The notes beneath the pieces are model-generated. The model did no database searches, was not told where the DNA came from, and saw nothing but the letters and a program-made list of their open reading frames with translations. Below, piece by piece: positions 9,378 through 43,643 of a stretch of 64,000 nucleotides of DNA. The position numbers were made by a program, and so were the translations under genes. The DNA comes from Haliotis rubra (taxonomy: Eukaryota): the NCBI RefSeq assembly GCF_003918875.1, contig NW_025767657.1, forward strand, positions 1,488,001-1,552,000. The letters are read 5' to 3'. The stretch's first letter is position 1. Each line of letters begins with the position of its first letter.

Positions 9378-9391
9378 GTCACTATGGAAAC
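9378..9391 (+). promoter_or_regulatory. Putative RFX X-box upstream of receptor copy A
   Basis: GTCACTATGGAAAC fits GTHNYYATRRNAAC 14/14; lies ~320 bp upstream of ATG 9713 in a block conserved among paralogs. Confidence 0.5.
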
Positions 9392-9712: not shown

Positions 9713-10873
9713 ATGTGCACCATATTTCTCAATATCTTCGTCCTGCTATATCCCGTTGGCGTGTTATGTGGGACAGAGTTGTCACCTCTGTACAAGTTAC
9801 ACAAAACAGTCCGAGAAGGCTATGATCCACACATTCGACCTATCAAAGATCCGAGAATGACCACCAATGTGACGGCGGACTTTGTGTTGTTTTCTGTAGA
9901 GGAGGTAAATGAAGCCAGTGAAACATTCACCTCGTTTGGGAAATTTAACATCACGTGGTACGATGAATGGCTCGTGTGGAACATTTCAAATCATGCCAAC
10001 ATTCGGAAAATTTACATGGATCTGCACAATATTTGGACGCCAGATCTGACGGTGTCAAACACCGTTGAGAATTACCGCATAATGTCAGATACAAAAGGAC
10101 TCGTGTCCGTGACTAACACAGGATTCATCACTTGGCAGCGGACGATGAGACAGACTACAAAATGCTCCATGGACATGAGCAAGTTTCCCATAGACAAACA
10201 GACATGTTCCCTTCGCCTCGATCAGTGGGTATCTGATAAGAATGAAATGATTTTACAAGGCGGATCAGTGAGGTCGAACTACAAATCGTTTCAAATTCAA
10301 GGAGAATGGATGGAAATTGAAAAGAGTATTGAAACAAAAACTATTTACCCGGGGGATATTACACGGAATGTGATTTTATTTACGTTTACCTTCCAGCGGA
10401 AGCCACTACACGTTGTGATCACCAGTGTCCTGCCTGTGTTCCTGCTGTCGGTTCTCAATCTTGGTGTGTTCCTTCTTCCTCCTGAATCGGGGGAGAAGAT
10501 CTCACTGTGTATCTCCGTATTCTTGTCCTACGCCCTCATCCTGACAGATATCAACGAAGATCTACCCCAATCACTTGCCTCCCTTGCTGTCTTCAGAGTG
10601 TATCTTCTCACAATGTTGTTGGTGAAGGTCATTACTATTTGGGCTACCATCATGGTCTTGAAAAGGTATCACACGGAGATTGGAGTCCTGCAACTGTCGT
10701 CTGCTTCATCCCAAGAAGGTGGTGAAGGCAAGAGTTCAGTGCTCGGTGAAAGTAAAGAACGATGTTACAAAAGGAAGTTGTCAGCAGATGCTCTGAATAG
10801 AGTTTGTTTTGCTGTCATCAGCTTGATAATGATCGTCACAACATCAATTTGTGTAGCGGTTTCACTGTTTTGA
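9713..10873 (+). CDS. Cys-loop ligand-gated ion channel, atypical nAChR-like subunit, copy A (386 aa, uninterrupted CDS)
   Basis: Signal peptide, YDPHIRP, WTPD, Cys loop CSMDMSKFPIDKQTC, M1, PPESGEKISL-M2, M3, short M3-M4 loop, M4; no vicinal Cys in loop C. Confidence 0.95.
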   Translation: MCTIFLNIFVLLYPVGVLCGTELSPLYKLHKTVREGYDPHIRPIKDPRMTTNVTADFVLFSVEEVNEASETFTSFGKFNITWYDEWLVWNISNHANIRKIYMDLHNIWTPDLTVSNTVENYRIMSDTKGLVSVTNTGFITWQRTMRQTTKCSMDMSKFPIDKQTCSLRLDQWVSDKNEMILQGGSVRSNYKSFQIQGEWMEIEKSIETKTIYPGDITRNVILFTFTFQRKPLHVVITSVLPVFLLSVLNLGVFLLPPESGEKISLCISVFLSYALILTDINEDLPQSLASLAVFRVYLLTMLLVKVITIWATIMVLKRYHTEIGVLQLSSASSQEGGEGKSSVLGESKERCYKRKLSADALNRVCFAVISLIMIVTTSICVAVSLF

Positions 10874-11405
10874 TATTTCACATGTGCATTGTGATATGCT
10901 GGCATTGTTTACATCACTCTACTGTTACACCAAGGACGGTGTCGGAACAGACACCAGGAATGGCATTCAGACATTTTACACCAGAATGTTGGAAACCCTT
11001 GTTTCCGAGTGGAGGCTTTAATTATTGAGTCCTCATACTTGCACAGAGCCATCTTAAGTAAAGGTACCTCAAACTTGAATCTAGCCATTTTTAAGTAAAT
11101 ATGTATCTCATGATATGGAGAGACGCCTACTGTATTAAAAATGTATATCAGTATTATTCGAAATAGATAGTGTTTAAATCATACCCCCGAGAGGGTATGT
11201 AAGTCCATGTCTCTCAAGGTAAGTTCGTATCTTAAGTATATTTGTTCTTTTAGGTGATGACTATCGCTTATCCTTATCGCTTATCACAAAGGAGATCTCT
11301 AAATGAGCAAGCATGACTCAGTTATCCACTGTAATGCATTAGAATTGCAGAGGACCTTTATAGATACAGGAATCTTCAAATGTCAGCATTATATCCCAAA
11401 AGGTA

Positions 11406-11630
11406 ACCGCCTCCATGGTGTAGTGGTTAGGGCGTCATACCAAAAGACGTTAAGATATGGTACTTGTTCGTCCCTGCCTGGCACTCGGCATTAATGGGAT
11501 ACAACAAGGACTGGTCAGCTCGGTGTCAGAATAATGTGTCTGAGGGGGGTATTCATGTTTAACTGTGGCACGGTATCTCAGCACGTCGTCATATGAGCGA
11601 AATATTCTTAAGTGCGACGTTAAATCCCAT
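11406..11630 (+). mobile_element. tRNA-derived SINE with V-domain-like body (internally deleted)
   Basis: A-box-like TGGTGTAGTGG; TCATACCAAAAGACGTTAAGATATGGTAC...CCCTGCCTGGCACTCGGCATTAA resembles the V-SINE domain; tail GAAATATTCTTAAGTGCGACGTTAAA. Confidence 0.6.
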
Positions 11631-12194
11631 TTCACATCTATCAAGTCTGTCTTCCACATGCACGAGGCTGTTGTATTTGGGCGTTTGAATCACACATGGT
11701 GCTTGTGTGTTTCAATACCCCTGTTTTTCGCTGTTTTTGACAATGTTTCACTTCACTCAAACTCAACGAATATTGAATCCGTTGCCTCAATGCATGTTTT
11801 TTAAGGTGTCGTTTAATTTTAGGGTGTTCCCATACTTTTTCTTTGTAGTCTAATTAGGTGAAATGCTGCGTTTTCAGAAGAGTTAAATTGTCCTATTTTC
11901 GACCATGCCGAAATAAACCAATGACAGTGATTTAGATTTCCTAAAGCAGGGTTGAAATATAACTCTGCTTTGAGACAAAGATAAACCATTTAAAGTCACC
12001 ATTTTTCAACCGTTAAACAAGAAACAACTGTTGTAAAGTGTCTAAAATTGTAAAAGAATCATTCCTGTGATATCAGTCTCTTAACACATTTTCTGCTGAT
12101 TTGCATTAGTAAAAACAAGTAAAACGTGTCTTTGATATTCGACAACATCATGTAGGGGAACCAATGAACCTTACACATGGCATCCATGTCATGT

Positions 12195-12300
12195 ACACGA
12201 CTTATTCAGCGCTACCGAGAGACTGGGGTCACCGTAGACAGACCAAGAAGTGGACATCCACGCATCACAACGCCAGCTGAAGATAGGTACCTCCGTCATT
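12195..12300 (+). mobile_element. Tc1/mariner transposase N-terminal fragment
   Basis: Translates RLIQRYRETGVTVDRPRSGHPRITTPAEDRYLRH, homologous to DRPRSGRPRITTPAQDR in the element at 35 kb. Confidence 0.75.
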
Positions 12301-13303: not shown

Positions 13304-13592
13304 CCTTCAGTGTAGGGAAGATCAGCTATCAAAGTAGAAGCCAGGGTGTATTAATGATTGGCTGGTTATTAAATGGGTGTCCTACTTTTTAACCCTTTGT
13401 TTTCACATATGCATAGTTTCACTTGCAGAACACTCTGCACTTGGAGACAGACACTGGATCATAAATTGAAGGAGTTAGTAACTATTATTATGTTCTTTTT
13501 ATGCCGTTCTGATGTATAAATCAATTCATGTAAATATGTCTATGTCAGATTAAAACATGTCACATATGCTTCATACACATACATACATATAT

Positions 13593-17830: not shown

Positions 17831-18072
17831 GACCCGTGAAGATCAGGGATAGAATCTATCTTCAGTAGCCTATGCTTGTCGTAAGAGGCGACAAACGGGA
17901 TTGGGTGGTCAGGCTCGCTGACTTGGTTGACACATGTCATCGTATCCCAATTGCGTAGATCGATGCTCATGATGTTGATCACTGTATTGTCTGGTCCAGA
18001 CTCGATTAATTACAGACCGCCGCCATATAGCTGGAATACTGCTGAGTGAAGCGTTAAAAAAAACAACCAACG
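17831..18072 (+). mobile_element. Short non-tRNA retroposon (family S), full length
   Basis: Starts GACCCGTGAAGATC, contains GCTTGTCGTAAGAGGCGAC, ends with the GCTGGAATA..GCTGAG..GCGTTAAA tail. Confidence 0.85.
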
Positions 18073-18613
18073 AACCATCTTTGGATTCTGACATCAGTCG
18101 AAAAACATTCATTCATGATTACTAACATGAAAAACAACTGGTAAGCCACTTCTGTTGCTCGCTTTGATGTTAGAGGTCATGTTGAGTATTGTTGAGCGCC
18201 TCATATTCTTTGGTTACTGTATACACAAGCAGTATTGTCAAAACAAACACTGAGAATGCGATTTATTCATTTCAGGGAACATGTAAAAAAAAATGTTGTG
18301 ATTTTCAGGGATTTTGTTAAATCCCTAAGAAGTCCAACGATTTTGTGAAACCACCGAGTGAATCACGAATTTTATAAAATCCCTGAAATTTTCAGTGATT
18401 TTACAAAATCACTGATTTGAAATATTCACTGTAACATATACACCTGTCGACTTACCAGTCTACTACTTGTTCGATAACATTAGAATGATTACCAATACAT
18501 GGTTCTGATAGTGTTTATATATACAATGTATTTGTAATGAGTATGGAAAAGAGTTTTGTCACGTCTATCTTCCTGTCTTGATGTTATGATACGTTAGCCC
18601 TTATTCAAGGATC

Positions 18614-18869
18614 GTCCCTAGTTTGGTGATCTACCTTTTGGTGTTGGCGATCTATAGCTTGTTTTTATATTGTATTGTGCAAATAGTGCTATCAGTTTTA
18701 ACTCTCCATACTAGTTTTAGTTGTAATTGTGATATTCTAGTTGTTTTACTGTCCTTCGTCAACAGTTTTTTTATTATATACATATATTTCATTTCAATAT
18801 CAAATGTTCTCGTCACAATATGGCTGAAATATTGCCGATGTGACGTTAAATATTAACTCACTCACTCAC
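18614..18869 (+). mobile_element. Family L copy, inserted after the B/C duplication
   Basis: TSD TATTCAAGGATC at 18602-18613 and 18870-18881; empty site in the paralogous unit at 24186-24197. Confidence 0.9.
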
Positions 18870-18957
18870 TATTCAAGGATCAAACAAATTGTGACAGAGT
18901 TTACAAATTGCAAGGTGTCTACAAGTAATGTCATGTCACATGTGTTCGAGCGGACTA

Positions 18958-19115
18958 GGGGCGGTGGGGTAGCCTAGTGGTTAAAGCGTTCGCTTGCAGC
19001 GCCGAAGACCCGGGTTCGATTCCCCACATGGGTACAATGTGTACATGCCTGGTGTCTCCCGTCGTGATATTCCTGGAATATTGCTAAAACCGGCGTAAAA
19101 CTCAACTCAACTCAC
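18958..19115 (+). mobile_element. tRNA(Asp)-like SINE (family T)
   Basis: A box TAGCCTAGTGG, B box GGTTCGATTCCC, tail GGAATATTGCTAAA..GGCGTAAAA(CTCA)n; TSD TCGAGCGGA; same insertion at 24288. Confidence 0.9.
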
Positions 19116-19913
19116 TCGAGCGGAGGAGATCTGTGTTGTATAAAGAATTGTTTAGTCCTCACATATGGCCATATACGTAAAATAATTATCACACATGTTC
19201 ATAGATCAGAAAGCCTTATGTAATACCCTCAGCATGCATTGACTGAAATAAGTCCAACTATATCGCCATGTTAGATATACTTGATTTGATACTCTTCTAT
19301 AATTAAGAACTGTCTGGTTCATATGCCAAATACATGAAGCAAGTTTCAGTGTTATTCGCACATCAGTACTGACTGCGCCACAATCCACATTGAACTAAAA
19401 AGTTTTCAAAAGGCGAGATAGAACAGAGGCACTTTATTCACCACTGGATATTTCACATAAGGTTTTTGTGTACAAAAGCTGAATCCCAGATTTCAGGATA
19501 TGACCTAAGATAATAATATTACTCTATACAGGTATGGATATATTTACAGAGATATTCAATTGTCTAAAAGATGACAAAAACGGTTCCTGGAAACCTCGAA
19601 TATCATACTTGTCAATACATGTCACTGGAACCATTTATAATGATATAATTCCATGGCAAATTATGCCGTTCCTTCGGTTCCAAAAGGCCTCTATTATTCT
19701 TTTCCAGTTGAGAAGTTTTCCACAGGTCGTCAGAGATGTCGTTTAAAATTAAGAGTACATTTAATCACTGAAACTGAATTTGTTTCACTTTTATGAGTTT
19801 CGAAACACATGCAATTTGACATGAAATAAACTCAAATGCCCGAATAGAAGTTTCCATGACATTTACCAATTCCCTTTCATTTATGCAATGATGCATAAAG
19901 TGTAATCAAATTA

Positions 19914-21068
19914 TTAAAACGGTAAGACAGCTAAACACATTGAGGTTGTAGTGATCATTATTAAGCTGATGACGGCAAAACAAACTCTATTCAGAGCATC
20001 TGCTGACCATTTCCTTTTGTACCATCTTCCATTACGCTCGTCAAGCATTAAACTGTTGAGGTCTCGTCCTTCCTGGCATGAAGCACCTTTACTGTGACGA
20101 GTGCCAATCTCGGTGTGATACCTTTTCAAGATGGCGACGGTGGCCCAAATAGTGATGACCTTGACCAACAACATTGTGAGGAGATAGACTTTGAAGATAC
20201 CAAGGGAATCGGGTGTGTGTGGAAGGTCCTCATTGATATCTGTCAGGATGAGGGCATAGGACAGGAACACGGAGATGCACAGTGAGATCTTCTCCCCTGA
20301 TTCAGGGGGAAGAAGAAACACGCCAAGATTGAGAACCGACAGCAGGAAGACAGGCAGGGCGCTGGTGATCAGAAAGTGTAGGGGCCTCCGCTGGAAGCTA
20401 AACTTAAAAGAAATTTCGTTCTGAGACAAAGTTTCTCCATAGGTATAAGTCTTTGTTTTTATGCTTTTTTCAATTTCTTTCCATTCTCCGTGACTTTGAA
20501 ACGGATTGTAGTTTGACATCACTGAACCACCTTGTAAAAATACTTCATTGTTGCTGGATATCCATTGAATAAGCCGCACGTCACATGTCTGCGAATCCAT
20601 GGGAAACTTGCTCATGTCCATGGAACATTTTGTAATCTGTCTCATTGTCCGGTACCACGTTACGAAGCCCGTGTTCCTGACAGACACGATTCCTGTCGTG
20701 TCTGACAGTAAGTGGTAGTCCTCAACGCTATTTAACACAACAAGATCTGGCGTCCAAACATGGTGTAGAGGAAGTTTAATTTCCTGAATTCCGTCATGAT
20801 CAGAGGTATTCCACACGAGCCATTCATCATACCATGTGATGTTGAACGTCCCAAAAGAGATAAAATTTTCACTAGCTTCATTGAGGTCCTCTACAGAGAA
20901 CATTGAAAAGTCTACCGTCACGTTTGTAGCTACTCTTGAGTTTTTGATAGGTCGAATGTGTGGCTTGTAGCCTTCAATGACTGTTTCATGTAAATTGTAC
21001 AAAGGGGACACCTTATGTCCAAATATCATGCCAAAGGGATAGAGCAGGACGAAGAGATTCAGAAACAT
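19914..21068 (-). CDS. Cys-loop nAChR-like subunit, copy B (384 aa, uninterrupted CDS)
   Basis: Same architecture as copy A; Cys loop CSMDMSKFPMDSQTC; PPESGEKISL. Confidence 0.95.
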   Translation of the reverse strand: MFLNLFVLLYPFGMIFGHKVSPLYNLHETVIEGYKPHIRPIKNSRVATNVTVDFSMFSVEDLNEASENFISFGTFNITWYDEWLVWNTSDHDGIQEIKLPLHHVWTPDLVVLNSVEDYHLLSDTTGIVSVRNTGFVTWYRTMRQITKCSMDMSKFPMDSQTCDVRLIQWISSNNEVFLQGGSVMSNYNPFQSHGEWKEIEKSIKTKTYTYGETLSQNEISFKFSFQRRPLHFLITSALPVFLLSVLNLGVFLLPPESGEKISLCISVFLSYALILTDINEDLPHTPDSLGIFKVYLLTMLLVKVITIWATVAILKRYHTEIGTRHSKGASCQEGRDLNSLMLDERNGRWYKRKWSADALNRVCFAVISLIMITTTSMCLAVLPF

Positions 21069-22069
21069 GCTGGATACAGCTTACTTAGTGTTAGTTTGAT
21101 GTAATTCGCTGGATTATTAATGTAGTTTTTTCTGTGCAGTTGGTACATCCAGTGACAATAACGTCTCACCTTCAGTCTGTTGTCTCGTGCTGAAGATACA
21201 CACTGTTGGATGGATTTACTTAATTTCTCTGGAAAGTTACACAGGAAGGATAAAACATTTGATCCGTTTGAACAATCACAAAAAAACTTGGAGAGATCCC
21301 TTCCCTGAAAAATGTTTGAACTTCACTGACGGAGACCAGGTGATAGTGAAACAGTGAATACCTATGATGGTTAATAAACCAATATCCGTGTAGCTGTTTA
21401 CAGTGCTGAGTAGTCCATTACCCCGCCAAAAGGAATGTTTGATGAACACTAATGGACTATTGATTTTGTCACCACTGTTAGACATTAACCATAGAAACAT
21501 TAGCTTCATTCGACTATGCATGATTGCGCCATCCATTCGTGAATGTAGACATTTTCCAATCTGACGCGCCAGTGACTAAATTCAAGTCATATGCCATTCC
21601 CTATATTTCTTTGTACCATACGTTCCCGGGTTGTTTGTTTTCCAAGGAGAACAGATAAATCATCTGTTGCCTTGGCATGATCATTACAATCAGGAGTATA
21701 TGACGGACCACAAGGGGTGCAGGAAATACCCCTTTACGCAAGCACATATTGTCAACAGCATTTGACGGTAATGTATAAACAGTTGTGAAATCGACTGAAC
21801 TTGAAGTAGAGATATTCGTGACTTTGTAATGGATTTTGTCATTTTCATTATGGTTATAAAATGTTTGTGTGCTGTCTTTCATATGATGTCTCTAAAACCT
21901 TATGTTTGGTTAACAAGACATATTTATGTTCACAAATGTGTCCCGGTTCTTATTGTAGTTTGTGCATGGCATGCTATATACCTGCAACCAGACATATATC
22001 ACAGGTGACTTCTCACTTGTTGACATTAGCAACCTTCGTCAACAATTCAAATATGGACCTAGATATCGT

Positions 22070-23717: not shown

Positions 23718-23935
23718 CTGTTAGAATTAATCCTCAGCAACCCGTGCTTGTCGTAAGAGGCGACTTACCGGATCGGGTGGTCGGGTGACTTGATTGACAC
23801 ATGTCATCGTATCCCAATTGCGAAGATAAATGCTCATGATGTTGATCACTGGTTTGTCTGGCCAAGACATTTACAGATCACCGCCATATAGCTGGAATAC
23901 TGCTGGGTGAGGCGTTAAAAAACAACCAACCAACC
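23718..23935 (+). mobile_element. Family S copy (paralogous to 17831 through segmental duplication)
   Basis: Same body and the same downstream flank (AACCATCT...ACATCAG) as the 17831 copy. Confidence 0.8.
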
Positions 23936-24287
23936 ATCTTCGGAGGTCTTACATCAGGCGGACAACATAAATTCATGATTAATAACATGAAAAGCACACT
24001 TGGCAAAACATCATCATATTATATACACTTGTTAACTTAACCCTCTACTACTCTTTTGGATAACATTAGTATGGTTACCAAAACATGGTTCTGATAGTGT
24101 ATATATACAATGTATTTGTAATGAGTATGGAAAATATTTTTGTCACGTCTGTCTTCCTGTCTTGATGTCATGAGACATGAGCCCTTATTCAAGGATCAAA
24201 CAAATTGTGACCGAGTTTACAAACTGCAAGGAGTCTACTAGTTACTTATTGCCAAATATTGATATGCCACATGTGTTTGAGCGGACT

Positions 24288-24462
24288 AAGGGCGGTGGTG
24301 TAGCCTAGTGGTTAAAGCATTAGCTCGCCACGCCGAAGACCCGGGCTTGATTCCCCAAATGGTACAATGTGTACATTTCTGGTGTCCCCCGTCGTGATAT
24401 TCCTAGAATATTGCTAAAACCAGCATAAAACTCAACTCAACTGAACTCACTCACTCACTTAC
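24288..24462 (+). mobile_element. Family T tRNA-SINE (paralogous to 18958)
   Basis: Same insertion site GAGCGGACT; A/B boxes and tail. Confidence 0.85.
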
Positions 24463-24888
24463 TCGAGCGGACTAGGTATGTGTTGTATGGAGGATTGTCT
24501 CATCCTCAAATGTGGCCTAAAATACTTATCAGTGTTCATAAGTCAGTAAGCCTCATGCAATGCCCTCAGCATGTATTGACTGAAATGAGTGCACCTATTA
24601 AAGATTCGTAGATATGGCCATGTTAGATATACTTGATAAGACACTTTTCTGTGTACCGTGTGGTTCTCATGTAATGTCAAATACATGAAGCAAGTTTCAA
24701 TGTTGTTCGTACATCAGTACCTGACTCTTCAGCACAATCCACATTAAACTGAAATGCTTTTTTAAAAGGGGAGATGGATGGTGGCACTTTATTCACCATT
24801 GGATATTTCACATAAGGTTGCCGTGTACAAATGTACAAATAGCTGAATCCAGATTTCAGGACATGACTTGCTGTAATAAAGATTACAA

Positions 24889-25394
24889 AAACTAGAAAGT
24901 GTTTTTACTCGTAAAAACAGATGTCTTCCACCTTCCCCCAGTTCAACGTTGAGACCTAAAACAATTCATATGATTCCTTCAACTTCAAAATCTCTAAGTA
25001 TGAAAATACATATTATGCATATCATGTTATTATGTTTGTAAAGTCTTCATTTGATATTTTCATATTCAATTGAACTTAATTGCTTATCAACAAATCAACA
25101 ACTCCACAGTTGTGAGAAGATGGGTAAAGTGGTTTTAGAGTTATGCTCAGGACACAAACCCTACCCTTCAAAAAGACCAAGTCCAATTCTTGCCATGAAA
25201 ACAGAAAAAAATATAATTGAAAAATAAATACTCAAACCCCAAAAAGGCACATCTACATGATATGGAGAGGCAGTATACCGAAGATTGTTCAAGTGGTTTT
25301 AGAGTTATGTTCTAGAAACAATGGGAGCGCTGAGACCAATGCTGACGGAAACTATACCAAAAACAATATGTCCCCCTTCAGGGGGAGACATAAT
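24889..25394 (+). mobile_element. Helentron/HINE-like non-autonomous element
   Basis: Begins AACTAG, ends with subterminal hairpin ATGTCCCCC-TTC-AGGGGGAGACAT-AAT; internal repeat GTGGTTTTAGAGTTATG twice; absent from the paralogous B unit. Confidence 0.55.
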
Positions 25395-25783
25395 GATTCC
25401 TGGAAACCTCAAAAATCATACTTGTCAATACACGATCACTGGAAAAATTCATAATTATTTCTAAAAAAATTCCATGGCAAAAGATGCCAGTACTTCGGGT
25501 CCAAAAGGCATTAATTATTCTTTTTCCTTTCACAAATACATGTATTATTTTAGGGACTTTCCACTGTTCAGAGATGGGGTTTGGGAAACTGAAAGACCAT
25601 TTACTCACTGAAGCTGAATTTGTTGCATTATTATGAGTTTCCAAACACTTGACATGAAAAAGTACTCAAATGCTCGAATAGCATTTTCCTTGACATTTAC
25701 TAACTCCTAAATTCCCTTTCATTTATGCAACAAATATCAAAAAGCAATATATATATCATGATGCATGAAGTAGCATCGAATGA

Positions 25784-26923
25784 TTAAAGCAGTAAGACAG
25801 CTAAACAAATTAACGTTGTGGCAGTCATTATCAAGGTGATGACAGCAAAACAAACTCTATTCAGAGCATCTGCTGACAGCTTCCTTTTGTACCATCTTTC
25901 ATTACGCTCGTCAAGCATTAAACTGTTCACTTCACGCCCTTGCTTATTCTGACGAATGCCAGTCTCGGTGTGATACCTTTTCAAGATGGCGACGGTGGCC
26001 CAAATAGTGATGACCTTGACCAACAACATTGTGAGGAGATAGACTTTAAAGATACCAAGGGAGTCGGGTGAATGGGGTAAATCTTCGTTGATATCTGTCA
26101 GGATGACGACATAGGACAAGAAGACAGAGATGCTCAATGATATCTTCTCCCCTGATTCAGGAGGAAGGAGAAACACACCAAGATTGAGAACCGACAGCAG
26201 GAAGACAGGTAGGACGCTGGTGATCACAAAGCGGAGAGGATTCCGCTGGTAGGTATATGTGAACGAAATTTCGTTCTGAGACAAAGTTTCCCCGAAGGTA
26301 AAAGTTTTTGTTTTTAGACATTTTTCAGTTTCTTTCCATTCTCCGTGACTTTGAAACGAATTGTAGATTGACATCACTGACCCACCTTGTAAAAATACTT
26401 CATTGTTGCTGGACATCCATTGAATAAGCCGCACGTCACATGTCTGCGAATCGATGGGAAACTTGCTCATGTCCATGGAACATTTTGTAATCTGTCTCAT
26501 TGTCCGGTACCATGTTACGAAGCCCGTGTTCCTGACAGACACGATTCCTTTCGCGTCTGACAGTAACTGGTAGTTATCAACGCTATTTGACACAACCAGA
26601 TCTGGAGTCCAAACATGTTGTAGAGGAAGTTTAATTTCCTGAATTCCGTCATGATCAGAGGTATTCCACACGAGCCATTCATCATACCACGTGATGTTGA
26701 AAGTCCCAAAAGAGATTAAAGTTTCACTAGCTTCATTGAGGTCTTCTACGGAGAACATTGAAAAGTCTACCGTCACGTTTGTAGTTACTCTTGAGTTTTT
26801 GATAGGTCGAATGTGTGGCTTGTAGCCTTCAGTGACTGTTTCATGTAACTTGTACAAAGGGGACACCTTATGTCCAAATATCATGCCAAGGGGATATAGC
26901 AGGACAAAGAGATTCAGAAACAT
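25784..26923 (-). CDS. Cys-loop nAChR-like subunit, copy C (379 aa), recent tandem duplicate of B
   Basis: Near-identical to B with a short deletion in the M3-M4 loop; Cys loop CSMDMSKFPIDSQTC. Confidence 0.95.
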   Translation of the reverse strand: MFLNLFVLLYPLGMIFGHKVSPLYKLHETVTEGYKPHIRPIKNSRVTTNVTVDFSMFSVEDLNEASETLISFGTFNITWYDEWLVWNTSDHDGIQEIKLPLQHVWTPDLVVSNSVDNYQLLSDAKGIVSVRNTGFVTWYRTMRQITKCSMDMSKFPIDSQTCDVRLIQWMSSNNEVFLQGGSVMSIYNSFQSHGEWKETEKCLKTKTFTFGETLSQNEISFTYTYQRNPLRFVITSVLPVFLLSVLNLGVFLLPPESGEKISLSISVFLSYVVILTDINEDLPHSPDSLGIFKVYLLTMLLVKVITIWATVAILKRYHTETGIRQNKQGREVNSLMLDERNERWYKRKLSADALNRVCFAVITLIMTATTLICLAVLLL

Positions 26924-28060
26924 GCTGGATACAGCTTCCTAAGAGTTAGTTTAATGTATTAATTCACTGGAGTATCATTAAAGCTTTTTCTGTGCAGTTG
27001 GTACATCCAGTGAAAATAACGTCTCACCTTCAGGCTGTTGCCTCCTGCTGAAGAGACACTGTTGGGTGGATTTACTTAATTTCTTTGGATATGCGCCGTC
27101 CTTTCCTCACGGCGACTATAAGTCAAGATGTTCGCTTGCTTGCTTTAAAACTGGAAGGATAAAACAGTTGATCAGTGCTTTGAGCAAAAGGAGTCGAGAC
27201 AACCCGTCCCTGAAAAAGCTTAAACTACTTTGGTGGAATAATGTGTTGCAGACCTGGTAATGGTAAAACAATGAAAACCTATCGTGAGAACGTAACCAAT
27301 ATCCGTGTAGGTATTTTCAGTGGGAAGTATACGATTACCCTGCCAAAGGGAATGTTTGATGAACACTATTAGACTATTGATTATTTTACCATTGTTTAAC
27401 ATAAAACATAGAACCATTAGCTTCCTTTTAAGTGCTCTACAACTGGTCAGAAAAACGCCAACCTTTTCGCAAAAGGCTAGTGTCATCAGCACTTGAGAGT
27501 AAGTTACACACAGTCGCTCAATCGACTGAACTTTTAGCACAGATTGTTGTGACTATGAAAAGGATTTTGTCTTCTTTATTATGGTGATTATAAATATACT
27601 TTTTGTGCCTTTTTTCATAGGATGCCTTATGTTTGGTTAACTATCGGAAAATCATATTGATGAACGCACATTCCATTTAACCGTTACATCATAGGGATAT
27701 TGGTGTTCAGAACACAGTCCAGGTTCTGGTTGTATTTTGTGCATGACATGTGGTAGTAACCAACTGTAAATGGGTCCAAACACCTGTCGCTGTTGAATAG
27801 TTATTACCCTGTGAGTTTTCCCGATTGGACGATATACGCTTAGGTGCTGACTAGTTGTAAATTTTGGTCAATACCTGAACTAATTACCGAAACTGACTTT
27901 GGTAAATAGTTATGAGATCAGTTCTGCCGCGATTCCAAAAGGTGTCGCATACATCTTTACATACATAATCTCGACATCATACCTCATTCTCGACATCATA
28001 AACATGTATGGACCGTCAAAAAAGCAGTTCAATATTATGAGACGAGAAACGAACCTACTG

Positions 28061-28418: not shown

Positions 28419-30013
28419 CTAAATAATTAAGCTATTAAAACAACTAGTTACAATACTTTTTAAGAACTGAAGCTTGGGTTTATTTAGGTGAACTTACAAA
28501 AGAACTATCAAAACATTCTTTTTGACAGATTTTAGTTTACTACACACTCATTTCCAAAGACGTGTTTGAAAATGAAAAATCTGATGTTTACACCTGACAC
28601 CGTTCATAATGATAAATAAAAGCATGAGACGCTAAATAACACCTTGACGTTTCATTGGTCTTTTATGAGGGAGTCTACATACATCAAATATCACGGAAAC
28701 TGCAGGCAGGGAAACAAACAAGGACCTGCTTTGTCGGCCTGTGGAAGATTTGTGCATTGATTGGTTTATGAAATATCATTTTATCATATATTGAATGCCA
28801 AGTGATTGTAAATAGTCGACTCTGGACCAGACCTGAGTCCCCTGATTAATATCGTGAGCATCGACATACACAATTGGGATTCATGGACATTCATCAAGAC
28901 TTCGTTAAGCAAACATGAGTTGTTGAAGACCAATTTAAAACCCGGATCTTCAGAGATCCGATGCCCCCATCGATGTAAGTTTGGTACGATATCGACTTTA
29001 TCCTGATATTTGTTTTATGTTTATCAGTATCCCCTATGCGTTTACTGATGAAGAGTCGGACTCGCCACTGTCGGCGCAGATATTTGGCATGGGTGATAGG
29101 ATTGCGTCCTCCCAGATGAGTAAGGACTTGGTCATCAAGGTCACTGGAAGCAAAAGTATTGTAAGTCCACACAGTCTCTAGTATGGGGGCAAACGTCCGT
29201 TGTTTCCGATCGCTTTCCAGATTTTATCTCTTATCGTTAGTTCTTAGCGTATGATTTTCCTTAAGCTAGTTTTAAGAAATATGTGAGTTTACTGTCCTTC
29301 ATTGACGGGGTTTTATAATTTATATGTTTTTTATCATGAATTTGGAAACTGTTTTAGACACGTAATGGCTGAAATACTGTCGATGTGACTAAAAATTTAT
29401 TATCACTCACGCACTCCATGAAAGGTTCTGCACTTTCTTTACTGTTTAATCTATATTATCCCTGTGCAGACATGTTCAAGACATCCAAACGAATAAGATC
29501 TTTACTTCAATAATTAAAGATACATACGCACCAGTTTCAAATGATTAAGGCTTTCGCTCATTTCAACAAATGTGAGCCAAACATAATGCACGAGATTTGT
29601 AAACAGTGCAAACGTATCAGAATGAACATAGTGTGCATGGATTATAAGACTAAACAAGCTACACAAATTGTCAATGTTAGAATCAATTGTCAGGTTGATG
29701 GCTGAAAACCAAACTCCATTCAGAGCCTCTGCTGTACGTTCATCATCAAGCATTGAATTGCCGCCATCAAGGCGTTCTTGGGAAGGAACAGACGACAGTT
29801 GTTGGGAGGGCATCTGAGTGTGATATCTTTTCAAGATGGCGACGGTGGCCAAAGCAGTAATCACCTTTACCAACAACATTGTGAGGAGATAGACTCTGAA
29901 GATGACAAGGCAGTCGAATGAATGGGGTGGACCTTCAGTAATATCTGTCAGGATGAGGGCATGGGACAAGAACACAGGAATACACCGTGAGATCTTACGC
30001 CCAGATTGAGGCT

Positions 30014-30168
30014 GACTGAGTTTGGCTTTACGCCGCTTTGAGCAATATTCCAGCAACATCACGGCGGGGGACACCAGAAATGGGCTTCACACGTTGTACC
30101 CATGTGGGGATTGGAACCCGGGTCTTTGGCGTGACGAGCCAACGCTTTAAGCACTAGACTAGGACTAC
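30014..30168 (-). mobile_element. Family T tRNA-SINE inserted in pseudogene D
   Basis: Reverse complement of the family T head, B box and tail. Confidence 0.85.
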
Positions 30169-30403
30169 TACTGATTGACAGCAGAGAGACAGGCAGGATG
30201 TTGGTAATGACATAGTTTAAGGGATTCCGCTGGAATGTAAATGTAAACAAAATTTCGTTCTAAGACAAAGTTTCCCCGTAGAAAGGTCAAGCATGTCCTG
30301 CTGTAGACAGGCAGGATGCTGGTAATGACATAGTTTAAGGGATTCCGCTGGAATGTAAATATAAACAAAATTTCGTTCTGAGACAAAGTTTCCCCGTAGA
30401 AAG

Positions 30404-31114
30404 GTCAAGCATGTCCTGCTTGACTGTATAGATTTTTCCATCACAAGGGATAAATATTTCAATGTCAAAACAGTGAAGGGTCTTTTTTATAGTGTTAATT
30501 ATCATTAATTTTTTTAATTTTAAAAAGAAATAGAATTACTTGATAAATTTTAATTGATGTGTTTTGTATATACACATATGTACATATATATTTTATTGTA
30601 GGTAGTTTGAATTAGCAACTTAGATTGTTAGTGTCTGTACCCTCACAGGGGGTTGAAATATTGTAAAATTATTGTCCTCCTGTGGGGGTACGGACGTCCC
30701 AAAACATTCAAGGTAAATTTCTACTAGATTTTTTAAAGCAGTATGTTTGTAATTTTGAATTATGGCTAGATTTGACTACAATCGCCAGTGGCTGAAGGGA
30801 TGGTGTAAATCCAGTTAGGGTCAATGCGGGTAGGAAAGGCACTGTAAGTCCCCATGGTCCCTAGTATGGTGATCAACCTTCAGTTCTTGGCGATCTATAG
30901 CCCATTTTTACATTGTATTGTCCAGAAATAATTTTCTACTTTTAAAGATATATGTTAACTGGTTTTAACTCAATCTGTGATAATCTAGTGGTTTTACTGT
31001 CCTTCGTTGACAGGGTTTTATATATTTTAGGTATGCATTATGAATTTAGAACTAGTTTTAGTCACGACCTGGCTGAAATATTGCCGATGTGACTTTAAAT
31101 CTCACACTCACTCA
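30404..31114 (+). mobile_element. I/Nimb LINE 3' end (ORF2 C-terminus plus 3' UTR), longest family L copy
   Basis: VKHVLLDCIDFSITRDKYFNVKTVKGLF (C-terminal zinc-knuckle region of I-clade ORF2), then the family L UTR and (CACT)n tail. Confidence 0.8.
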
Positions 31115-31329
31115 CCCCACCCCCCAACCCACGTAGATATGTGTTCTTGTTCTGATACTCTTTTCAATTTCCCTCAATTCTCTTCGTCTTTTAAAGAAAT
31201 TATCGTCTGATATCACTGATCCACCTTGTAAAAACACATCATTGTTACCAGATATCCATTGAACAATGCGCAGTCTACACGTCTGTGTGTCTAGGGGAAA
31301 CTTGCTTATGTCCATGGAGCATTGCTTAT

Positions 31330-31679
31330 GTACATTTTCCTACAATCGCCAGCGGCTGAAGGGTTGGTGTAAATCCAGCTAGGGTCCATGCAGGTAGCAA
31401 AAGTAATGTAAGTCCCCATGGTTCCTAGTATGGTGATCTACCTTCAGTTGTTGGCGATCTATAGCCCGTATTTTATATTGTATTGTCTTCTTTGATTGGA
31501 ATATTTTAGCTTTGCTCGCTAGTTTTATATTTATATCTGTGATTCTCTAGTCTTTTTACTGTCCATCGTCGACAGGTTTTAATCTTCAAAATGTTTCCAC
31601 TTTTTATTGTATGGATTGTTTTCGTCACGATATGGCTGAGATATTGCCGATGTGACGTTAAATAGTAACTCACTCACTA
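31330..31679 (+). mobile_element. Family L copy in pseudogene D
   Basis: CCTACAATCGCCAGCGGCTGAAGG...GACGTTAAA..CACTCACT. Confidence 0.85.
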
Positions 31680-32360
31680 CATCTTCTGTACAGATCAAGG
31701 TCGTCGTACATATCTAAATGGTTTGACCTTTCTCTAAATATACGGTTTCCAAACATGGTGTAGTGGCATGTAACTTCTCTGAATGTTGGCATGATCTGAA
31801 TGGTTCAACGGAGCCATTCATGTGATGTTGAAAGTCCCAAACGTGGTTGAAGTTTCACTGGCTTAATTAATCTCCTCCACAGAAAACAACATAAAGTCCA
31901 CCGTCACATTTGTGGCCATTTTCGGAGTTTTGATTGGTCGAATGTATGGATCGTAGCCTTCTCTGACTCTTTTGTGTAACTTGTAGAGAGGTGAAATCTC
32001 AGCCCCATAAAACACGCCAAGGGGATATAGCAGAACGAAAATATTCAGAAGCATACCAGGGAATGCAAACGGTGTGCATTCTGTATCTGTCTAATGAAGC
32101 AAATGTCTCACCCCCTCGCTGCTGTTGTCTGTCTCGCAGTGAACTGGTAATATAATATAATATCTATATCGTTATGCCTTATTCGGTAAATATACTGATT
32201 TACTTAATGGTTTGAATATATGCTTTGTGCATGAAAACAAAATTCAAATTCAGTTAGCTATTTACAATGACTGATGCATGTGTTTGTTAAATACTTAACG
32301 TCTATTGATTTTTCTTCGATTTCCATGTCCAGGGAGTAGACATTACACATTGAACTATTA

Positions 32361-32374
32361 GGTTCCATAGTGAC
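32361..32374 (-). promoter_or_regulatory. Decayed X-box upstream of pseudogene D
   Basis: GTCACTATGGAACC, one mismatch to the copy A/E motif, at the homologous position. Confidence 0.4.
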
Positions 32375-36094: not shown

Positions 36095-36096
36095 TA

Positions 36097-40690: not shown

Positions 40691-42041
40691 AGACACTTGC
40701 GCGGTTTGGGGCTGTGTGCTCCAACATTCCCTTGTTCCTCTATAAGTTCATTCACTCGCTGCCTCCTGCCCTGGGGGGCTGTTCCTGCAACAGTACTACT
40801 GTTACTTTACCCTCGTAAAACTTCACTCGGAAAATCTAAACAAAATGATGATAGTTTGTTAAGTAACTTTTATATTTTGGAGACAAACGGTATGCAACAG
40901 AGTTGGTCTGATGTTTTCATTACATTCTGCATTGAAATGAATGTTTCATCGTGAACCGATCTGGTGTTAGATTGTGATTCATCGGTATCATTTTGAATCC
41001 TCCTGTTTCAAGCCAGACGTGATCGTCTGATACCTTTCCCACAATCTAATGATTATGCTATGTCTGACGCTAAACCAACGTCCGACTTCATATTTTCTCA
41101 GATAAGCTTCATTTAAACCTATGGCCCTACCCGCTACATCAGTTGAGAGATAGCATCTACAAGGCATTTTGCATCTCTGAAGACCATACAGTACTCAAAA
41201 GAAACAGTTAACAACTCGTGTTTATGCACCTCAACACGTCATATTCTGGAAAATGGTCTTCAAGGTAACGAACTAGAATTGCTGGCCTGTCCAAATAGAT
41301 TTCAAATATAATGTGAAGGTAGTCTCCAAGACGGGACATCATTTGTGGGATGACAACGATTGTGACCATCAGCTACCCAAAACGTTACAAATTGCTTCAG
41401 CGACAGGCGTACGTGAATGAAGTCATCTTTGCTTGGCTTTGTCTTGGCAATGATTCACAAAGAAGACTACACATGTGTTGTACATACGGATGTGACCAAT
41501 GTAGTGATACAACACCTGAAACAGTTCAGCAATACATGTTGGAATGTCCTCATAAGTGCGGTGGTGGGGCAGGTTTTTATTCCTGCAATAATACATGCCC
41601 AAATCATGTGTGGTTGAATCCAAAGTTCAAACCTACATACAGCATTTTTTGTCTAACAATTGAAATGGATAAATCAGATTGGTTATTATCTGGCATTGAA
41701 GTTTTTAATGTATAACAGTACATTTGTGATTGATAATATGAATTGTACGGTTCACAAAGCATAATCTGTTACATACACTCGTTGACGTAACAACCCTCTA
41801 CTACCATTTCAGATAAAATTTAAATCGTTAATAATATCAACACATGTTTCGTATATACTTTGACATGCACAATGGAGATTCATTATTATAATGGGGTGGG
41901 GTTTATCACATCTAATTAAATCTATCTTCATGTCTTGAAGTACATGAGAAAGTATTCATCGTGGCAAGTGCTCAAACACATTGCGACTGGTGTGAATTTA
42001 CAAAATCCATACGTTCACTAAAAATGAGTCTACCTGGTAGT

Positions 42042-42420
42042 GGGCGTGGTGGGCGAGCTGGCTAAGGCGCCAGGCTAGTAATCCAGCGAGTTTGAGGTGC
42101 CGGGATAGAGCCCACCTGTGACAGGGTGTGAAAAACCTTGGAGTCAACTTTGTGTGCAGACTCTTTCAGTGTTGTCACAACAATCCGTTGGTATATGACA
42201 AGATGGTGGCCACATGAATACGTGCAAACACCTAGTTTGCAACCTAGTTGCAGCAACGTGCAGTAAACTTGGACAAAGCTGTGAATGGGTACCTCGTAAG
42301 GATGGGAAAGCCACATTAACTCGGTGCGCTTGAGACTGACATCCTATGATCGAGGGAAAAACAGCCTAGCTGGAACTCGGCGCTATATAAATAAATTATA
42401 ATAAAATAATAATAATAAAT
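42042..42420 (+). mobile_element. tRNA-derived SINE with L2-type tail
   Basis: A/B-box-like head; GAGTCAACTTTGTGTGCAGACTCT and GCTGTGAATGGGTACC central motifs; ends GCGCTATATAAAT(AAT)n. Confidence 0.7.
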
Positions 42421-42482
42421 CACTATTATTTACATTTATCACATCAAACATTGTCATGTCAGATTTGCTCCAGCAGGACAGA

Positions 42483-43643
42483 TCAAAACAGTAAGAGAGC
42501 TAAACAAACTGCTGTTGTGGCAATCATTATCAAGCTGATGGCTGGAAAACATACTCTGTTCAGAGCATCTGCTGACATCTTCCTTTCATGATACTTTCCT
42601 TTACAATCATCAAGCACTGAATTTCCACCATCAAGTCCTTCCTGGGATGAAGCAGACGACAGCTGATGAGCGCTCATCTCAGCGTGATACCTTTTCAAGA
42701 TGGCGACGGTGGCCAAAACAGTAATCACTTTGACCAACAGCATCGTGAGAAGATAGACTTTGAAGGTAACAAGTGAGTCGAATGAATGGGGTAGATCTTC
42801 GTTGATATCTGTCAGGATGACGGCATAAGACAAGAACACTGAGATACATAGCGAGATCTTCTCCCCTGATTCAGGAGGAAGAAGAAACACGCCCAGATTG
42901 AGAACCGACAGCAGAAAGACAGGCAGGACACTTGTGATCACAAAGTGCAGGGGCTTCCGTTGGAAGGTAAATGTAAACGAAATTACGTTCCATGTTGTTT
43001 CCCCGAGGAAAAGAGTTTTTGTTTTGGTACCCGTTTCCCTTTCTATCCATTCCCCTCGACTTTGAAATGAAGTGTAGTCTGACATCACTGACATCACTGA
43101 CCCACCTTGCACAAACACATTATTACTATTGGATGTCCACTGAGAAATACGCAGGCTACACGTCTGTTTGTCTATGGGAAACCTGCTCATGTCCATGGAG
43201 CATTTAGTGATCTGTCTTATCGTCCGGTACCAGGTGACAAATCCTGTGTTCGAGACAGACACGAGTCCTTCTGTATCTGACAAAAAGCGAAAGTCCTCAA
43301 CGGCATTTGCCACAACCAGATCTGGCTTCCACACTTGATGTAGTGGCAAGTACATTTTCTGAATGTTGGCATGATCTGAAATGTTCCAAACGAACCACTC
43401 GTCGTACCACGTGATGTTGAAAGTCCCAAACGAGGTTAAAGTTTCACTGGCCTCATTTACCTCCTCCACAGAAAACAACGTAAAATCCACCGTCACATTT
43501 GTAGCCAGTCTGGGGTTTTTGATAGGTCGAATGTGTGGATTGTAGCCTTTGGTGACTGTTTCATGTAACTTGTACAGAGGCGAAAAGTCAGTTCCGCATG
43601 CCATGGACAGGGCATGTAGCAGAACGAACACATTCAGAAACAT
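42483..43643 (-). CDS. Cys-loop nAChR-like subunit, copy E (386 aa from the MFLNVF start)
   Basis: Start aligned with the paralog signal peptides; Cys loop CSMDMSRFPIDKQTC; PPESGEKISL; four TM segments. Confidence 0.92.
   Translation of the reverse strand: MFLNVFVLLHALSMACGTDFSPLYKLHETVTKGYNPHIRPIKNPRLATNVTVDFTLFSVEEVNEASETLTSFGTFNITWYDEWFVWNISDHANIQKMYLPLHQVWKPDLVVANAVEDFRFLSDTEGLVSVSNTGFVTWYRTIRQITKCSMDMSRFPIDKQTCSLRISQWTSNSNNVFVQGGSVMSVMSDYTSFQSRGEWIERETGTKTKTLFLGETTWNVISFTFTFQRKPLHFVITSVLPVFLLSVLNLGVFLLPPESGEKISLCISVFLSYAVILTDINEDLPHSFDSLVTFKVYLLTMLLVKVITVLATVAILKRYHAEMSAHQLSSASSQEGLDGGNSVLDDCKGKYHERKMSADALNRVCFPAISLIMIATTAVCLALLLF

What the first reader, a model, noticed from the sequence alone, without database searches (positions are those of the whole stretch)
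9713..43643. Tandem cluster of ACh-site-deficient, cation-type Cys-loop channels: candidate chemosensory receptor family
Seen: five paralogs (A on +, B-E on -) with intronless CDSs, intact Cys loop and a very short M3-M4 loop. Loop A lacks the Tyr (WxPDLxVSN/LN/AN); the loop D Trp position is K or T (SFGKFNITW / SFGTFNITW); loop B keeps W but not GSWTY (DQW/IQW/SQW); loop C has no YxCC and is the most variable part (TIYPGDITRN, TYTYGETLSQN, TFTFGETLSQN, TLFLGETTWN), while M1-M2 is almost invariant. Known: cephalopod chemotactile receptors are intronless, tandemly arrayed nAChR derivatives that lost the ACh aromatic box, and intronless nAChR expansions are reported in bivalves. Inference: these genes may be an independent or shared mollusc system of channels gated by environmental chemicals.
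Basis: partly seen in the sequence, partly recalled or inferred. Interest (0 to 1): 0.85.

Follow-up and report, generated by a model that had tools for sequence, protein, structure and literature searches.

The report
Abalone orphan nicotinic-like channel gene cluster
This stretch of the blacklip abalone genome holds four intact intron-free genes and one dead copy for nicotinic-receptor-like cation channels that have lost the acetylcholine-binding residues, a kind of gene expansion already known in molluscs, and a taste or smell role is still untested.

Summary
The window is Haliotis rubra contig QXJH01000092.1. The observation mostly holds. Four complete single-exon genes (A, B, C, E; 379-386 aa) encode Cys-loop receptor subunits with an intact Cys loop, a GEK-type cation pore and a roughly 35-residue M3-M4 loop. 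The loop A Tyr, loop D Trp and loop C Cys-Cys are missing. The fifth copy, D, is a shattered pseudogene, not an intact CDS.

The family (8 members in two abalone species) is a strongly supported Haliotis-only clade. It sits inside a large intronless, tandemly arrayed gastropod/bivalve nAChR-like expansion. In that expansion, loss of the ACh site is the rule: 108 of the 110 nearest relatives lack the loop C Cys-Cys.

Selection is purifying overall (omega about 0.3-0.4). It is extreme on M1-M2 (omega 0.04 at normal synonymous divergence) and relaxed on loops A and C and the intracellular loop (about 0.5). No site shows supported positive selection.

I found no specific tie to the cephalopod chemotactile receptors and no RNA evidence. 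The chemosensory idea is therefore neither supported nor excluded, and it has already been voiced in the literature. The scan found three similar arrays elsewhere in this genome. Verdict: a new member of a known kind, of modest interest.

The parts
9713..10873 (+). Gene A: single-exon nAChR-like Cys-loop subunit, 386 aa. Loop D is K77, loop A S115, loop B W172, and there is no loop C Cys-Cys.
   Evidence: ORF. Pfam LBD 1.8e-37 plus TM region. AlphaFold model pLDDT 91.4, pTM 0.82. Best PDB matches are muscle nAChR alpha1 and 5-HT3A. This exact protein is not in the public protein collection, so no protein model with this exact sequence is on record.
19914..21068 (-). Gene B: single-exon paralog, 384 aa, 86% identical to C.
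   Evidence: Not in the protein collection.
25784..26923 (-). Gene C: single-exon paralog, 379 aa, with the shortest M3-M4 loop (30 residues).
   Evidence: Not in the protein collection.
29691..32054 (-). Copy D: a degenerate pseudogene. Pieces lie at 32054-31707 (N-terminus, two in-frame stops), 31324-31133 (Cys loop to loop F, other frame), 30440-30303 and 30313-30197 (duplicated loop C/pre-M1), and 30011-29691 (M2 to M4, with E-to-R at -1' and deletions).
   Evidence: tblastn of A, B, C and E against the window and the ORF list.
42483..43643 (-). Gene E: single-exon paralog, 386 aa. The real start is the ATG at 43643; the longer mechanical ORF to 44105 is not conserved. NCBI annotates it as a 3-exon model (P0002) that replaces M4 with exons at about 41524-41486 and 40782-40672.
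17850..21914 (-). Tandem segmental duplication unit holding gene B. It is homologous to 23722-27641, which holds gene C.
   Evidence: blastn gives 72-88% identity through about 0.85 kb upstream and about 2 kb downstream of the CDS. B-C dS is 0.21.
23722..27641 (-). Second copy of the B/C duplication unit, holding gene C.
9378..9474 (+). Conserved non-coding block about 240-335 bp upstream of the gene A ATG (GTCACTATGGAAACTAA ... TTAAGCATTCAACAAACACAT). It is shared with D (about 32277-32374) and E (44092-44165), and more weakly with the two out-of-window paralogs. It may be a promoter or 5'-UTR element.
   Evidence: blastn and motif search of 900-bp upstream regions. The function is inferred only.
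44092..44165 (-). The same conserved upstream block, about 450-520 bp upstream of the gene E ATG.

Best explanation
This is a Haliotis-specific tandem array of single-exon genes from the nicotinic-receptor branch of the Cys-loop (pentameric ligand-gated channel) superfamily. It holds four intact genes and one pseudogene.

The array is one twig of the large intronless nAChR-like expansion of gastropods and bivalves, which probably began with an old retrogene. This twig grew by local DNA duplication, as the B/C segmental duplicate and the shared upstream blocks show, and it loses copies by decay (D in the window, a frameshifted copy 270 kb away).

The proteins keep everything needed to be a gated cation pore:
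- signal peptide and Cys loop with FPxD;
- beta1-beta2 Glu, pre-M1 Arg and M2-M3 Pro;
- GEK at the cytoplasmic mouth, 9' Leu, and an acidic outer ring (D17', E20', D21').

They lack the loop A Tyr, the loop D Trp and the loop C Cys-Cys/Tyr that hold acetylcholine. The most likely working mode is therefore that they are subunits of cation channels not opened by acetylcholine at an interface made of these subunits alone. They would be gated by an unknown agonist or serve as non-binding partners.

Shown: gene structure, family placement, conserved pore and gating residues, the selection pattern. Inferred: channel function, cation selectivity, non-cholinergic gating. Unknown: agonist, tissue, subunit partners.
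For: - Identity: the window equals H. rubra QXJH01000092.1 (100% over 22,975 bp).
- Family membership: Pfam LBD plus TM region. PDB sequence matches to nAChR alpha1 at 4e-38. The model aligns to alpha7 with Z 31.5 over 350 residues.
- Clade: eight family members form a 100/100 clade on a long stem, sister to a second Haliotis clade. That sister clade is also single-exon and tandem. The next relative, a Patella gene, is also single-exon.
- Neighbours: other identified neighbours are scallop, clam, oyster, Biomphalaria, Batillaria and Babylonia.
- Gating and pore residues: invariant or nearly so in 110 relatives (R229 in 110, D161 in 110, P285 in 109, E at -1' in 106, L at 9' in 105).
- Selection: pairwise omega is 0.27-0.43 and M0 omega is 0.41. 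M1-M2 loop plus M2 has pN 0.023 against pS 0.387 (omega 0.04), so the invariance is selection and not gene conversion. The Cys loop has omega 0.13, loop A 0.55, loop C 0.48 and the intracellular loop 0.50.
- Duplication: the B/C duplication includes flanks.
- Literature: intronless, tandem, lineage-specific nAChR expansions with degraded ACh sites are described for molluscs (PMC6896357; PMC13174522).
Against: - No transcript evidence. No RNA run holds A or E. The one putative RNA run I laid covered only the flanking repeats. No short family fragments appear in public assemblies.
- No protein with the exact sequence of A, B or C is in the public protein collection.
- One in five copies in the window, and one of two copies 270 kb away, are broken.
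- Overall omega of 0.3-0.4 is high for a synaptic receptor.
- Channel function and ion selectivity are read from sequence only.
- A related lophotrochozoan orphan (Alpo4) has resisted all attempts to gate it (PMC10338036).
Confidence: 0.8

Rival explanations
1. These are environmental chemoreceptors. The channels sit in tentacle, lip, osphradium or larval apical organ. Waterborne or surface-bound chemicals open them at a remodelled orthosteric pocket, in convergence with cephalopod chemotactile receptors.
For: - The same ingredients as CRs are present: intronless tandem genes, lost ACh box, conserved cation pore.
- The fastest-evolving LBD parts are loops A and C (omega 0.5-0.85 in windows).
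- The three highest-ranked sites for beta>alpha include the loop A Tyr and loop C Tyr equivalents, A115 and A212.
- Gene turnover follows a birth-and-death pattern, with no clear one-to-one orthologs between H. rubra and H. cracherodii.
- Published speculation says divergent molluscan nAChR clades may be ionotropic chemosensors (PMC13174522).
Against: - None of these features is specific. They hold for most of the 110 nearest relatives.
- No window reaches omega above 1 and no site exceeds a posterior of 0.32, so relaxed constraint explains the loops equally well.
- There is no expression evidence.
- There is no special similarity to CRT1 or CRB1.
- Bivalve relatives are expressed mainly in gill, gonad and embryos and respond to stress (PMC6896357).
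Confidence: 0.2
2. These are accessory (structural) subunits. They co-assemble with canonical alpha-type abalone nAChR subunits and tune conductance, desensitisation or trafficking without binding agonist, like vertebrate alpha5 or beta3.
For: Both the principal-face residues (loops A and C) and the complementary-face residue (loop D) are lost, while the pore, the Cys loop and the coupling residues are strictly kept. The loop B Trp is retained in all four window genes.
Against: - An accessory role does not obviously need eight or more fast-turning-over paralogs.
- The very short intracellular loop lacks the long segment that canonical subunits carry.
- No co-expression or assembly data exist.
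Confidence: 0.2
3. These are mostly idle duplicates on the way to pseudogenes, with intact reading frames by recency only.
For: - D is dead, the out-of-window copy P0004 has a frameshift before M4, and H. cracherodii has two more wrecks.
- A, B and C are not in the protein collection.
- No RNA was found.
- Intron-poor bivalve nAChRs more often show no or low expression (PMC6896357).
Against: - Paralogs separated by dS 0.5-0.67 still have full frames and omega about 0.3.
- 31 codons of M1-M2 loop plus M2 show pN 0.023 against pS 0.387.
- 81% of those sites have posterior above 0.9 for purifying selection.
- That pattern cannot arise without selection on the protein.
Confidence: 0.08

Closest known systems
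Expanded intronless, tandemly arrayed nAChR-like genes of molluscs and other lophotrochozoans (Jiao et al. 2019, PMC6896357; clades with LBD substitutions in MolluscaGenes 2026, PMC13174522)
   Same: - Single-exon genes in tandem arrays.
- Lineage-specific duplication.
- LBD-NTM architecture.
- Most members lack the alpha-type Cys-Cys and the full ACh site.
- GEK cation motif.
- Pseudogenes are present among the copies.
   Different: This particular clade is seen only in Haliotis (H. rubra, H. cracherodii). It is separated from its nearest relatives (about 39% identity) by a long stem. Three of its four window genes have no matching protein in the public collection. Its loop D position carries K, T or G rather than an aromatic residue.
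Cephalopod chemotactile receptors (CRT1, PDB 9E6B; squid CRB1, PDB 8EIZ)
   Same: They are nAChR-derived and reported as intronless and tandemly expanded. ACh-binding residues are replaced. They are cation channels of the same fold (Z 22.9-23.3 to the model of A).
   Different: - No evidence of common descent beyond the nAChR family. Identity to CRT1 (24%) and CRB1 (20%) is no higher than to human alpha7 or mouse 5-HT3A (24%).
- CRs are absent from the 60 best sequence matches.
- All identified nearest relatives are gastropod or bivalve.
- CRs have shown ligands, sucker expression and positively selected pocket residues (bioRxiv 10.1101/2025.03.03.641191). None of these is shown here.
Alpo4, orphan nAChR-like receptor of the annelid Alvinella pompejana (PDB 8BX5; PMC10338036)
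   Same: It is a lophotrochozoan nAChR-like subunit without the loop C Cys-Cys and has no known agonist. Similarity to A is comparable (E 3e-29; Z 25.9 and 23% identity).
   Different: Alpo4 keeps the aromatic cage (F103, W159, Y199, Y205, W65). The abalone genes keep only the loop B Trp.
Non-binding accessory nAChR subunits of vertebrates (alpha5, beta3)
   Same: They are subunits with a conserved pore and an incomplete agonist site.
   Different: The vertebrate genes are intron-rich, single-copy and slowly evolving, with long intracellular loops (general knowledge). These genes are intronless, multi-copy and fast-evolving, with a loop of about 35 residues.

Membership tests
[quoted passage not shown] | Extracellular LBD plus four-helix TM domain | tested here: met
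   Pfam PF02931 (E 1e-34 to 1e-39) and PF02932 in A, B, C and E. The AlphaFold model (pLDDT 91.4) has a beta-sandwich plus four helices. Z 31.5 to alpha7 over 350 residues.
[quoted passage not shown] | Cys loop C-x13-C with FPxD | tested here: met
   CSMDMSKFPIDKQTC in A. C151, C165, P159 and D161 are invariant in the family.
[quoted passage not shown] | Cation-type M2 signature (Glu at -1', no Pro-Ala-Arg), 9' Leu | tested here: met
   PESGEKISLCISVFLSYALILTDINEDLP is invariant or nearly so in all family members. This is sequence-level only; selectivity was not measured.
Acetylcholine-binding alpha-type nAChR subunit | Vicinal Cys-Cys (YxCC) at the tip of loop C | tested here: not met
   No Cys-Cys in any family member. 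In the alignment with alpha1 the two Cys fall in a gap.
Acetylcholine-binding alpha-type nAChR subunit | Aromatic box: loop A Tyr, loop B Trp, loop C Tyr x2, loop D Trp | tested here: not met
   - Loop A is S / L / S / A.
- Loop D is K / T / T / T.
- The second loop C Tyr is replaced (R in A).
- Only the loop B Trp is kept, plus a Tyr or Phe at the first loop C position in some copies.
Cephalopod chemotactile receptors (CRs) | Descent from the CR clade (monophyly with cephalopod CRs) | tested here: inconclusive
   No CR sequences could be brought into a tree. Indirect evidence is negative:
- CRT1 24% and CRB1 20% identity against alpha7 24%.
- CRs are not in the best 60 PDB hits.
- Nearest relatives are Haliotis, Patella and bivalves.
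Cephalopod chemotactile receptors (CRs) | Intronless genes in tandem arrays with ACh-binding residues replaced | tested here: met
   These features are shared with most of the molluscan expansion, so they are not diagnostic.
Cephalopod chemotactile receptors (CRs) | Expression in peripheral chemosensory epithelium | not testable with these tools
   No RNA run holding the genes was found. The laid putative RNA run covers only repeats.
Cephalopod chemotactile receptors (CRs) | Gating by poorly soluble environmental molecules, not by ACh | not testable with these tools
   Needs electrophysiology.
Cephalopod chemotactile receptors (CRs) | Diversifying selection on pocket residues | tested here: inconclusive
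   My own grid (FUBAR-like) analysis of 8 sequences gave a maximum posterior for beta>alpha of 0.32, at the loop A Tyr-equivalent. No sliding window exceeded omega 0.85. Power is low.
Molluscan intronless tandem nAChR expansion (Jiao et al. 2019) | Single coding exon | tested here: met
   Complete ORFs run from signal peptide to stop. The sister-clade genes and the Patella relative are also exactly 3 x aa + 3 bp long.
Molluscan intronless tandem nAChR expansion (Jiao et al. 2019) | Tandem, lineage-specific duplication | tested here: met
   - Five copies lie within 34 kb.
- The B/C duplicate includes flanks.
- Within-species clusters (B,C) and (E,F,G) appear in the tree.
- Further copies lie 270 kb away.

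The most novel reading that the evidence does not exclude
Abalone, and perhaps gastropods generally, have independently turned intronless nAChR-derived retrogenes into peripheral ionotropic chemoreceptors. This Haliotis-only clade would detect algal, biofilm or conspecific cues at a remodelled non-aromatic pocket. That would be a convergent parallel to the cephalopod chemotactile receptors.
Probability: 0.15. Interest if true: 0.8.

Novelty: new member of a known kind. Interest (0 to 1): 0.3.

Why it matters
If these channels were shown to be peripheral chemoreceptors, the turning of neurotransmitter receptors into chemosensors would have happened at least twice within molluscs. It would also give a molecular handle on abalone settlement and feeding cues, which matter for aquaculture and conservation.

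As it stands, the practical value is smaller:
- It adds a well-defined, abalone-specific clade to the known molluscan nAChR-like expansion.
- It shows by synonymous versus non-synonymous divergence that the pore and gating parts are under strong selection, so the genes are in use.
- No protein matching A, B or C is in the public collection, and the models for E and for one H. cracherodii copy are wrong.

Tried and rejected
1. Bringing cephalopod CR sequences into a joint tree. The word-indexed protein searches returned only abalone, other gastropod, crinoid and cnidarian hits. The 20 cluster representatives I could label were all gastropod or bivalve, plus one mite. PDB sequences cannot be exported. 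No formal test of monophyly with CRs was possible.
2. Reading the primary CR papers (PMC10228259, PMC7605239, PMC11055638). They are not held. I used a review and two preprints instead.
3. Expression. Two run searches found only DNA holders. Laying X3-X5 showed even coverage of gene and intergenic DNA, so these are genomic runs of a close relative. The putative RNA run X11 covered only high-copy repeats. A search for short protein fragments of the invariant M1-M3 block in public assemblies found one 64%-identical fragment from another genome and nothing else.
4. Positive selection. Region-wise NG86, sliding windows and a home-made grid/empirical-Bayes site analysis gave no window with omega above 1 and no site with posterior above 0.32.
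5. Foldseek against the PDB does not discriminate among nAChR-type chains.
6. Gene conversion as the cause of M1-M2 invariance. Rejected, because synonymous divergence there is normal.
7. The long mechanical ORF of E (540 aa from a TTG at 44105). Rejected as the real start, because all paralogs begin at the conserved MFLN Met.


Full report
**What is there.** The window is 100% identical over 22,975 bp to Haliotis rubra assembly GCA_003918875.1, contig QXJH01000092.1, with record coordinate = window + 1,488,000.

A six-frame ORF scan and a tblastn with the first gene find five copies of one gene family:
- A: 9713-10873 (+), 386 aa.
- B: 19914-21068 (-), 384 aa.
- C: 25784-26923 (-), 379 aa.
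- E: 42483-43643 (-), 386 aa from the conserved Met.
- D: about 29691-32054 (-).

A, B, C and E are uninterrupted from signal peptide to stop. Each matches Pfam Neur_chan_LBD (E 1e-34 to 1e-39) and Neur_chan_memb.

D is not an intact gene. It is split over two frames and has in-frame stops after EEIN and NIT. It lacks residues of about 125-149 and most of M1, carries a duplicated loop C/pre-M1 piece, and has E-to-R at the -1' pore position.

All the motif-level statements are correct.

**Anatomy of the proteins.** The columns were fixed in two ways: by the HMMER alignment to human muscle alpha1, and by canonical alpha-type sequences in a 116-sequence alignment, which carry W / Y / W and YxCC (P0100, P0161).

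| Position | A | B | C | E |
|---|---|---|---|---|
| Loop A Tyr | S | L | S | A |
| Loop D Trp | K | T | T | T |
| Loop B Trp | W | W | W | W |

The loop C Cys-Cys is deleted in all four, and the second loop C Tyr is replaced.

The following are kept:
- the Cys loop (C-x13-C with FPID);
- the beta1-beta2 EEVNE;
- the pre-M1 Arg (R229);
- the M2-M3 Pro (P285);
- an M2 reading PESGEKISLCISVFLSYALILTDINEDLP, that is Glu at -1', Leu at 9', and Asp/Glu/Asp at 17', 20' and 21'.

That is the cation-channel signature (general knowledge of pLGIC selectivity filters; not measured here).

The M3-M4 segment is 35 residues, and 30 in C. AlphaFold2 on a 116-sequence alignment gives a confident model (pLDDT 91.4, pTM 0.82) with only about 13 non-helical residues between M3 and M4. 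Its best structural matches are alpha7, muscle nAChR subunits, alpha4beta2 and 5-HT3A.

**Family and neighbours.** Paralogs are 69-86% identical. Two more copies lie about 270 kb further along the same contig: P0001, which is intact, and P0004, which has a frameshift before M4.

H. cracherodii has at least two intact copies. One is P0003. The other is a full ORF at L006:9578-10741 that is annotated only as a 246-aa fragment, P0006. It also has two wrecks.

An exhaustive HMMER search of 1.84 billion cluster representatives finds the family as one isolated cluster. The next hits score less than half as much and are 37-39% identical abalone proteins.

In ML trees the eight family members form a 100/100 clade on a long stem. 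Their sister is a second Haliotis-only clade, which is also single-exon and tandem on another contig. Next come a single-exon Patella gene and other Haliotis genes. Every further representative I could label was gastropod or bivalve: Pinctada, Saccostrea, Ylistrum, Mercenaria, Solemya, Biomphalaria, Batillaria and Babylonia.

Inside the family there are no clear one-to-one orthologs between the two abalone species. (B,C) and (E,F,G) cluster within H. rubra. This is a birth-and-death pattern.

B and C arose by a tandem DNA duplication that includes about 0.85 kb upstream and about 2 kb downstream. A, D and E share a short conserved upstream block.

**How special is the loss of the ACh site?** It is not special. 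Among the 110 nearest non-family relatives:

| Feature | Count of 110 |
|---|---|
| Loop C Cys-Cys present | 2 |
| Tyr at the loop A position | 11 |
| Trp at loop D | 40 |
| W / Y-or-F / W triad kept | 9 |
| Glu at -1' | 106 |
| Leu at 9' | 105 |
| M3-M4 segment of 60 residues or fewer | 50 |

This is the picture already published. Molluscan nAChR genes are massively expanded, largely intronless and in tandem arrays, and only a minority keep the alpha signature or the full principal site. The authors suggest diverse ligands (PMC6896357).

A 2026 preprint resolves 15 molluscan nAChR clades. These include cephalopod CRs, a 'CR-like' clade that reaches gastropods, and several clades with binding-site substitutions. 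It explicitly raises an ionotropic chemosensory role (PMC13174522). I could not tell which of those clades this family belongs to, because no supplements are held.

**Selection.**
- Pairwise NG86 gives dS of 0.21 (B-C), 0.30 (E-P0001) and 0.44-0.67 for the other pairs, with omega 0.27-0.43. A one-ratio codon model gives omega 0.41.
- By region: M1-M2 loop plus M2 has pN 0.023 against pS 0.387, omega 0.04. The Cys loop has 0.13 and the beta2 strand NITWYDEWLVWN 0.04.
- Loop A has 0.55 (windows up to 0.85), loop C 0.48-0.64, and the intracellular loop 0.5-0.65.
- Because synonymous divergence in M1-M2 is normal, the invariance is purifying selection on the protein, not gene conversion. This is the strongest evidence that the intact copies are in use.
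- A grid-based empirical-Bayes site analysis that I wrote, in the spirit of FUBAR (8 sequences, tree length 2.5 substitutions per codon), puts only 4% of prior mass on beta>alpha, and no site exceeds a posterior of 0.32.
- The top-ranked sites are the loop A Tyr equivalent (A115), A166 and the first loop C Tyr equivalent (A212). That is suggestive, but it is equally what relaxed constraint on a disused ACh site would give.

**Relation to cephalopod chemotactile receptors.** I could not obtain CR sequences for a joint tree. The indirect evidence is negative.
- In an all-against-representatives structural search the model of A aligns to octopus CRT1 (9E6B) with 24% identity and to squid CRB1 (8EIZ) with 20%.
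- That is no closer than human alpha7 (24%), mouse 5-HT3A (24%) or annelid Alpo4 (23%).
- In a sequence search of the PDB the CRs are not among the best 60, which run from 4e-38 to 8e-29.

Together with the gastropod and bivalve neighbourhood of the family, an independent lineage-specific expansion is the better reading. A shared mollusc-wide sensory system gets no support here.

The properties that define CRs functionally could not be tested. These are sucker expression, gating by poorly soluble ligands, and positively selected aromatic pocket residues (bioRxiv 10.1101/2025.03.03.641191; PMC11526382).

**Expression.** No public run on record as RNA holds A or E.
- Runs X3-X5 cover gene E and its intergenic flanks alike, so they are genomic DNA of a close relative with about 1-2% differences.
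- The small putative RNA run X11 covers only two high-copy repeats beside the gene.
- No short fragments of the family-specific M1-M3 block occur in public assemblies.
- No protein with the exact sequence of A, B or C is in the protein collection.
- E is annotated with a three-exon model that swaps M4 for sequence next to a minisatellite.

**Verdict.** The object is a real, selected, abalone-specific branch of a known kind of gene expansion. The chemosensory interpretation remains an untested hypothesis that these data neither favour nor exclude, and it is not new.

The scan has already flagged three similar arrays elsewhere in this genome. Two of them were followed up, with the same conclusion.

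Noticed in passing
window 36172-40689: A 4.5-kb minisatellite array with a 32-bp unit (TCTTCTAAAAGCCACCTCATCAAGCCTGATCT) and higher-order periods of 58, 93 and 427 bp. GC skew is strong, about -0.43. The last exon of the NCBI model for gene E (40782-40672) abuts it.
   Followed up: partly
window 9713-10873, 19914-21068, 25784-26923; L006:9578-10741: No protein matching the three intact receptor genes is in the public protein collection. Gene E is modelled with a spurious or alternative 3' end that removes M4. An intact H. cracherodii copy is annotated as a 246-aa fragment. Single-exon members of this family seem to be systematically under-called.
   Followed up: partly
window 35118-35867 (+): A Tc1/mariner-type transposase remnant (HTH_Tnp_Tc3_2 and DDE_3 hits) lies between pseudogene D and the minisatellite.
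   Followed up: partly
window 5714-6799 (+): A 361-aa ORF with a Ser/Pro-rich N-terminus, a coiled-coil middle and a C-terminal part has no Pfam hit. From memory it resembles a LINE ORF1-type protein. This was not tested.
   Followed up: no
window 41926-42438 and 45175-45687 (also 40900-41070, 44491-44661): Very high-copy short repeats flank gene E. Summed contig depth is 1e5 or more in genomic runs of a related abalone. They are the only parts of the stretch present in a small putative RNA run, which suggests SINE-like elements.
   Followed up: partly
window about 43079: Gene E carries a 9-bp tandem duplication (GGSVMSVMS against GGSVMS in the paralogs). One contig from the related abalone sample lacks these 9 bp, so the insertion is polymorphic or species-specific.
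   Followed up: no
window 240-671 (-): An ORF fragment has an ISXO2-like DDE transposase domain (E 7e-07). It is probably a eukaryotic transposon remnant.
   Followed up: no
window above 53212 (-): The annotated neighbour on the high-coordinate side is a Mediator subunit 13 gene (2042-aa product), whose exons run into the window. It may serve as a synteny anchor.
   Followed up: no
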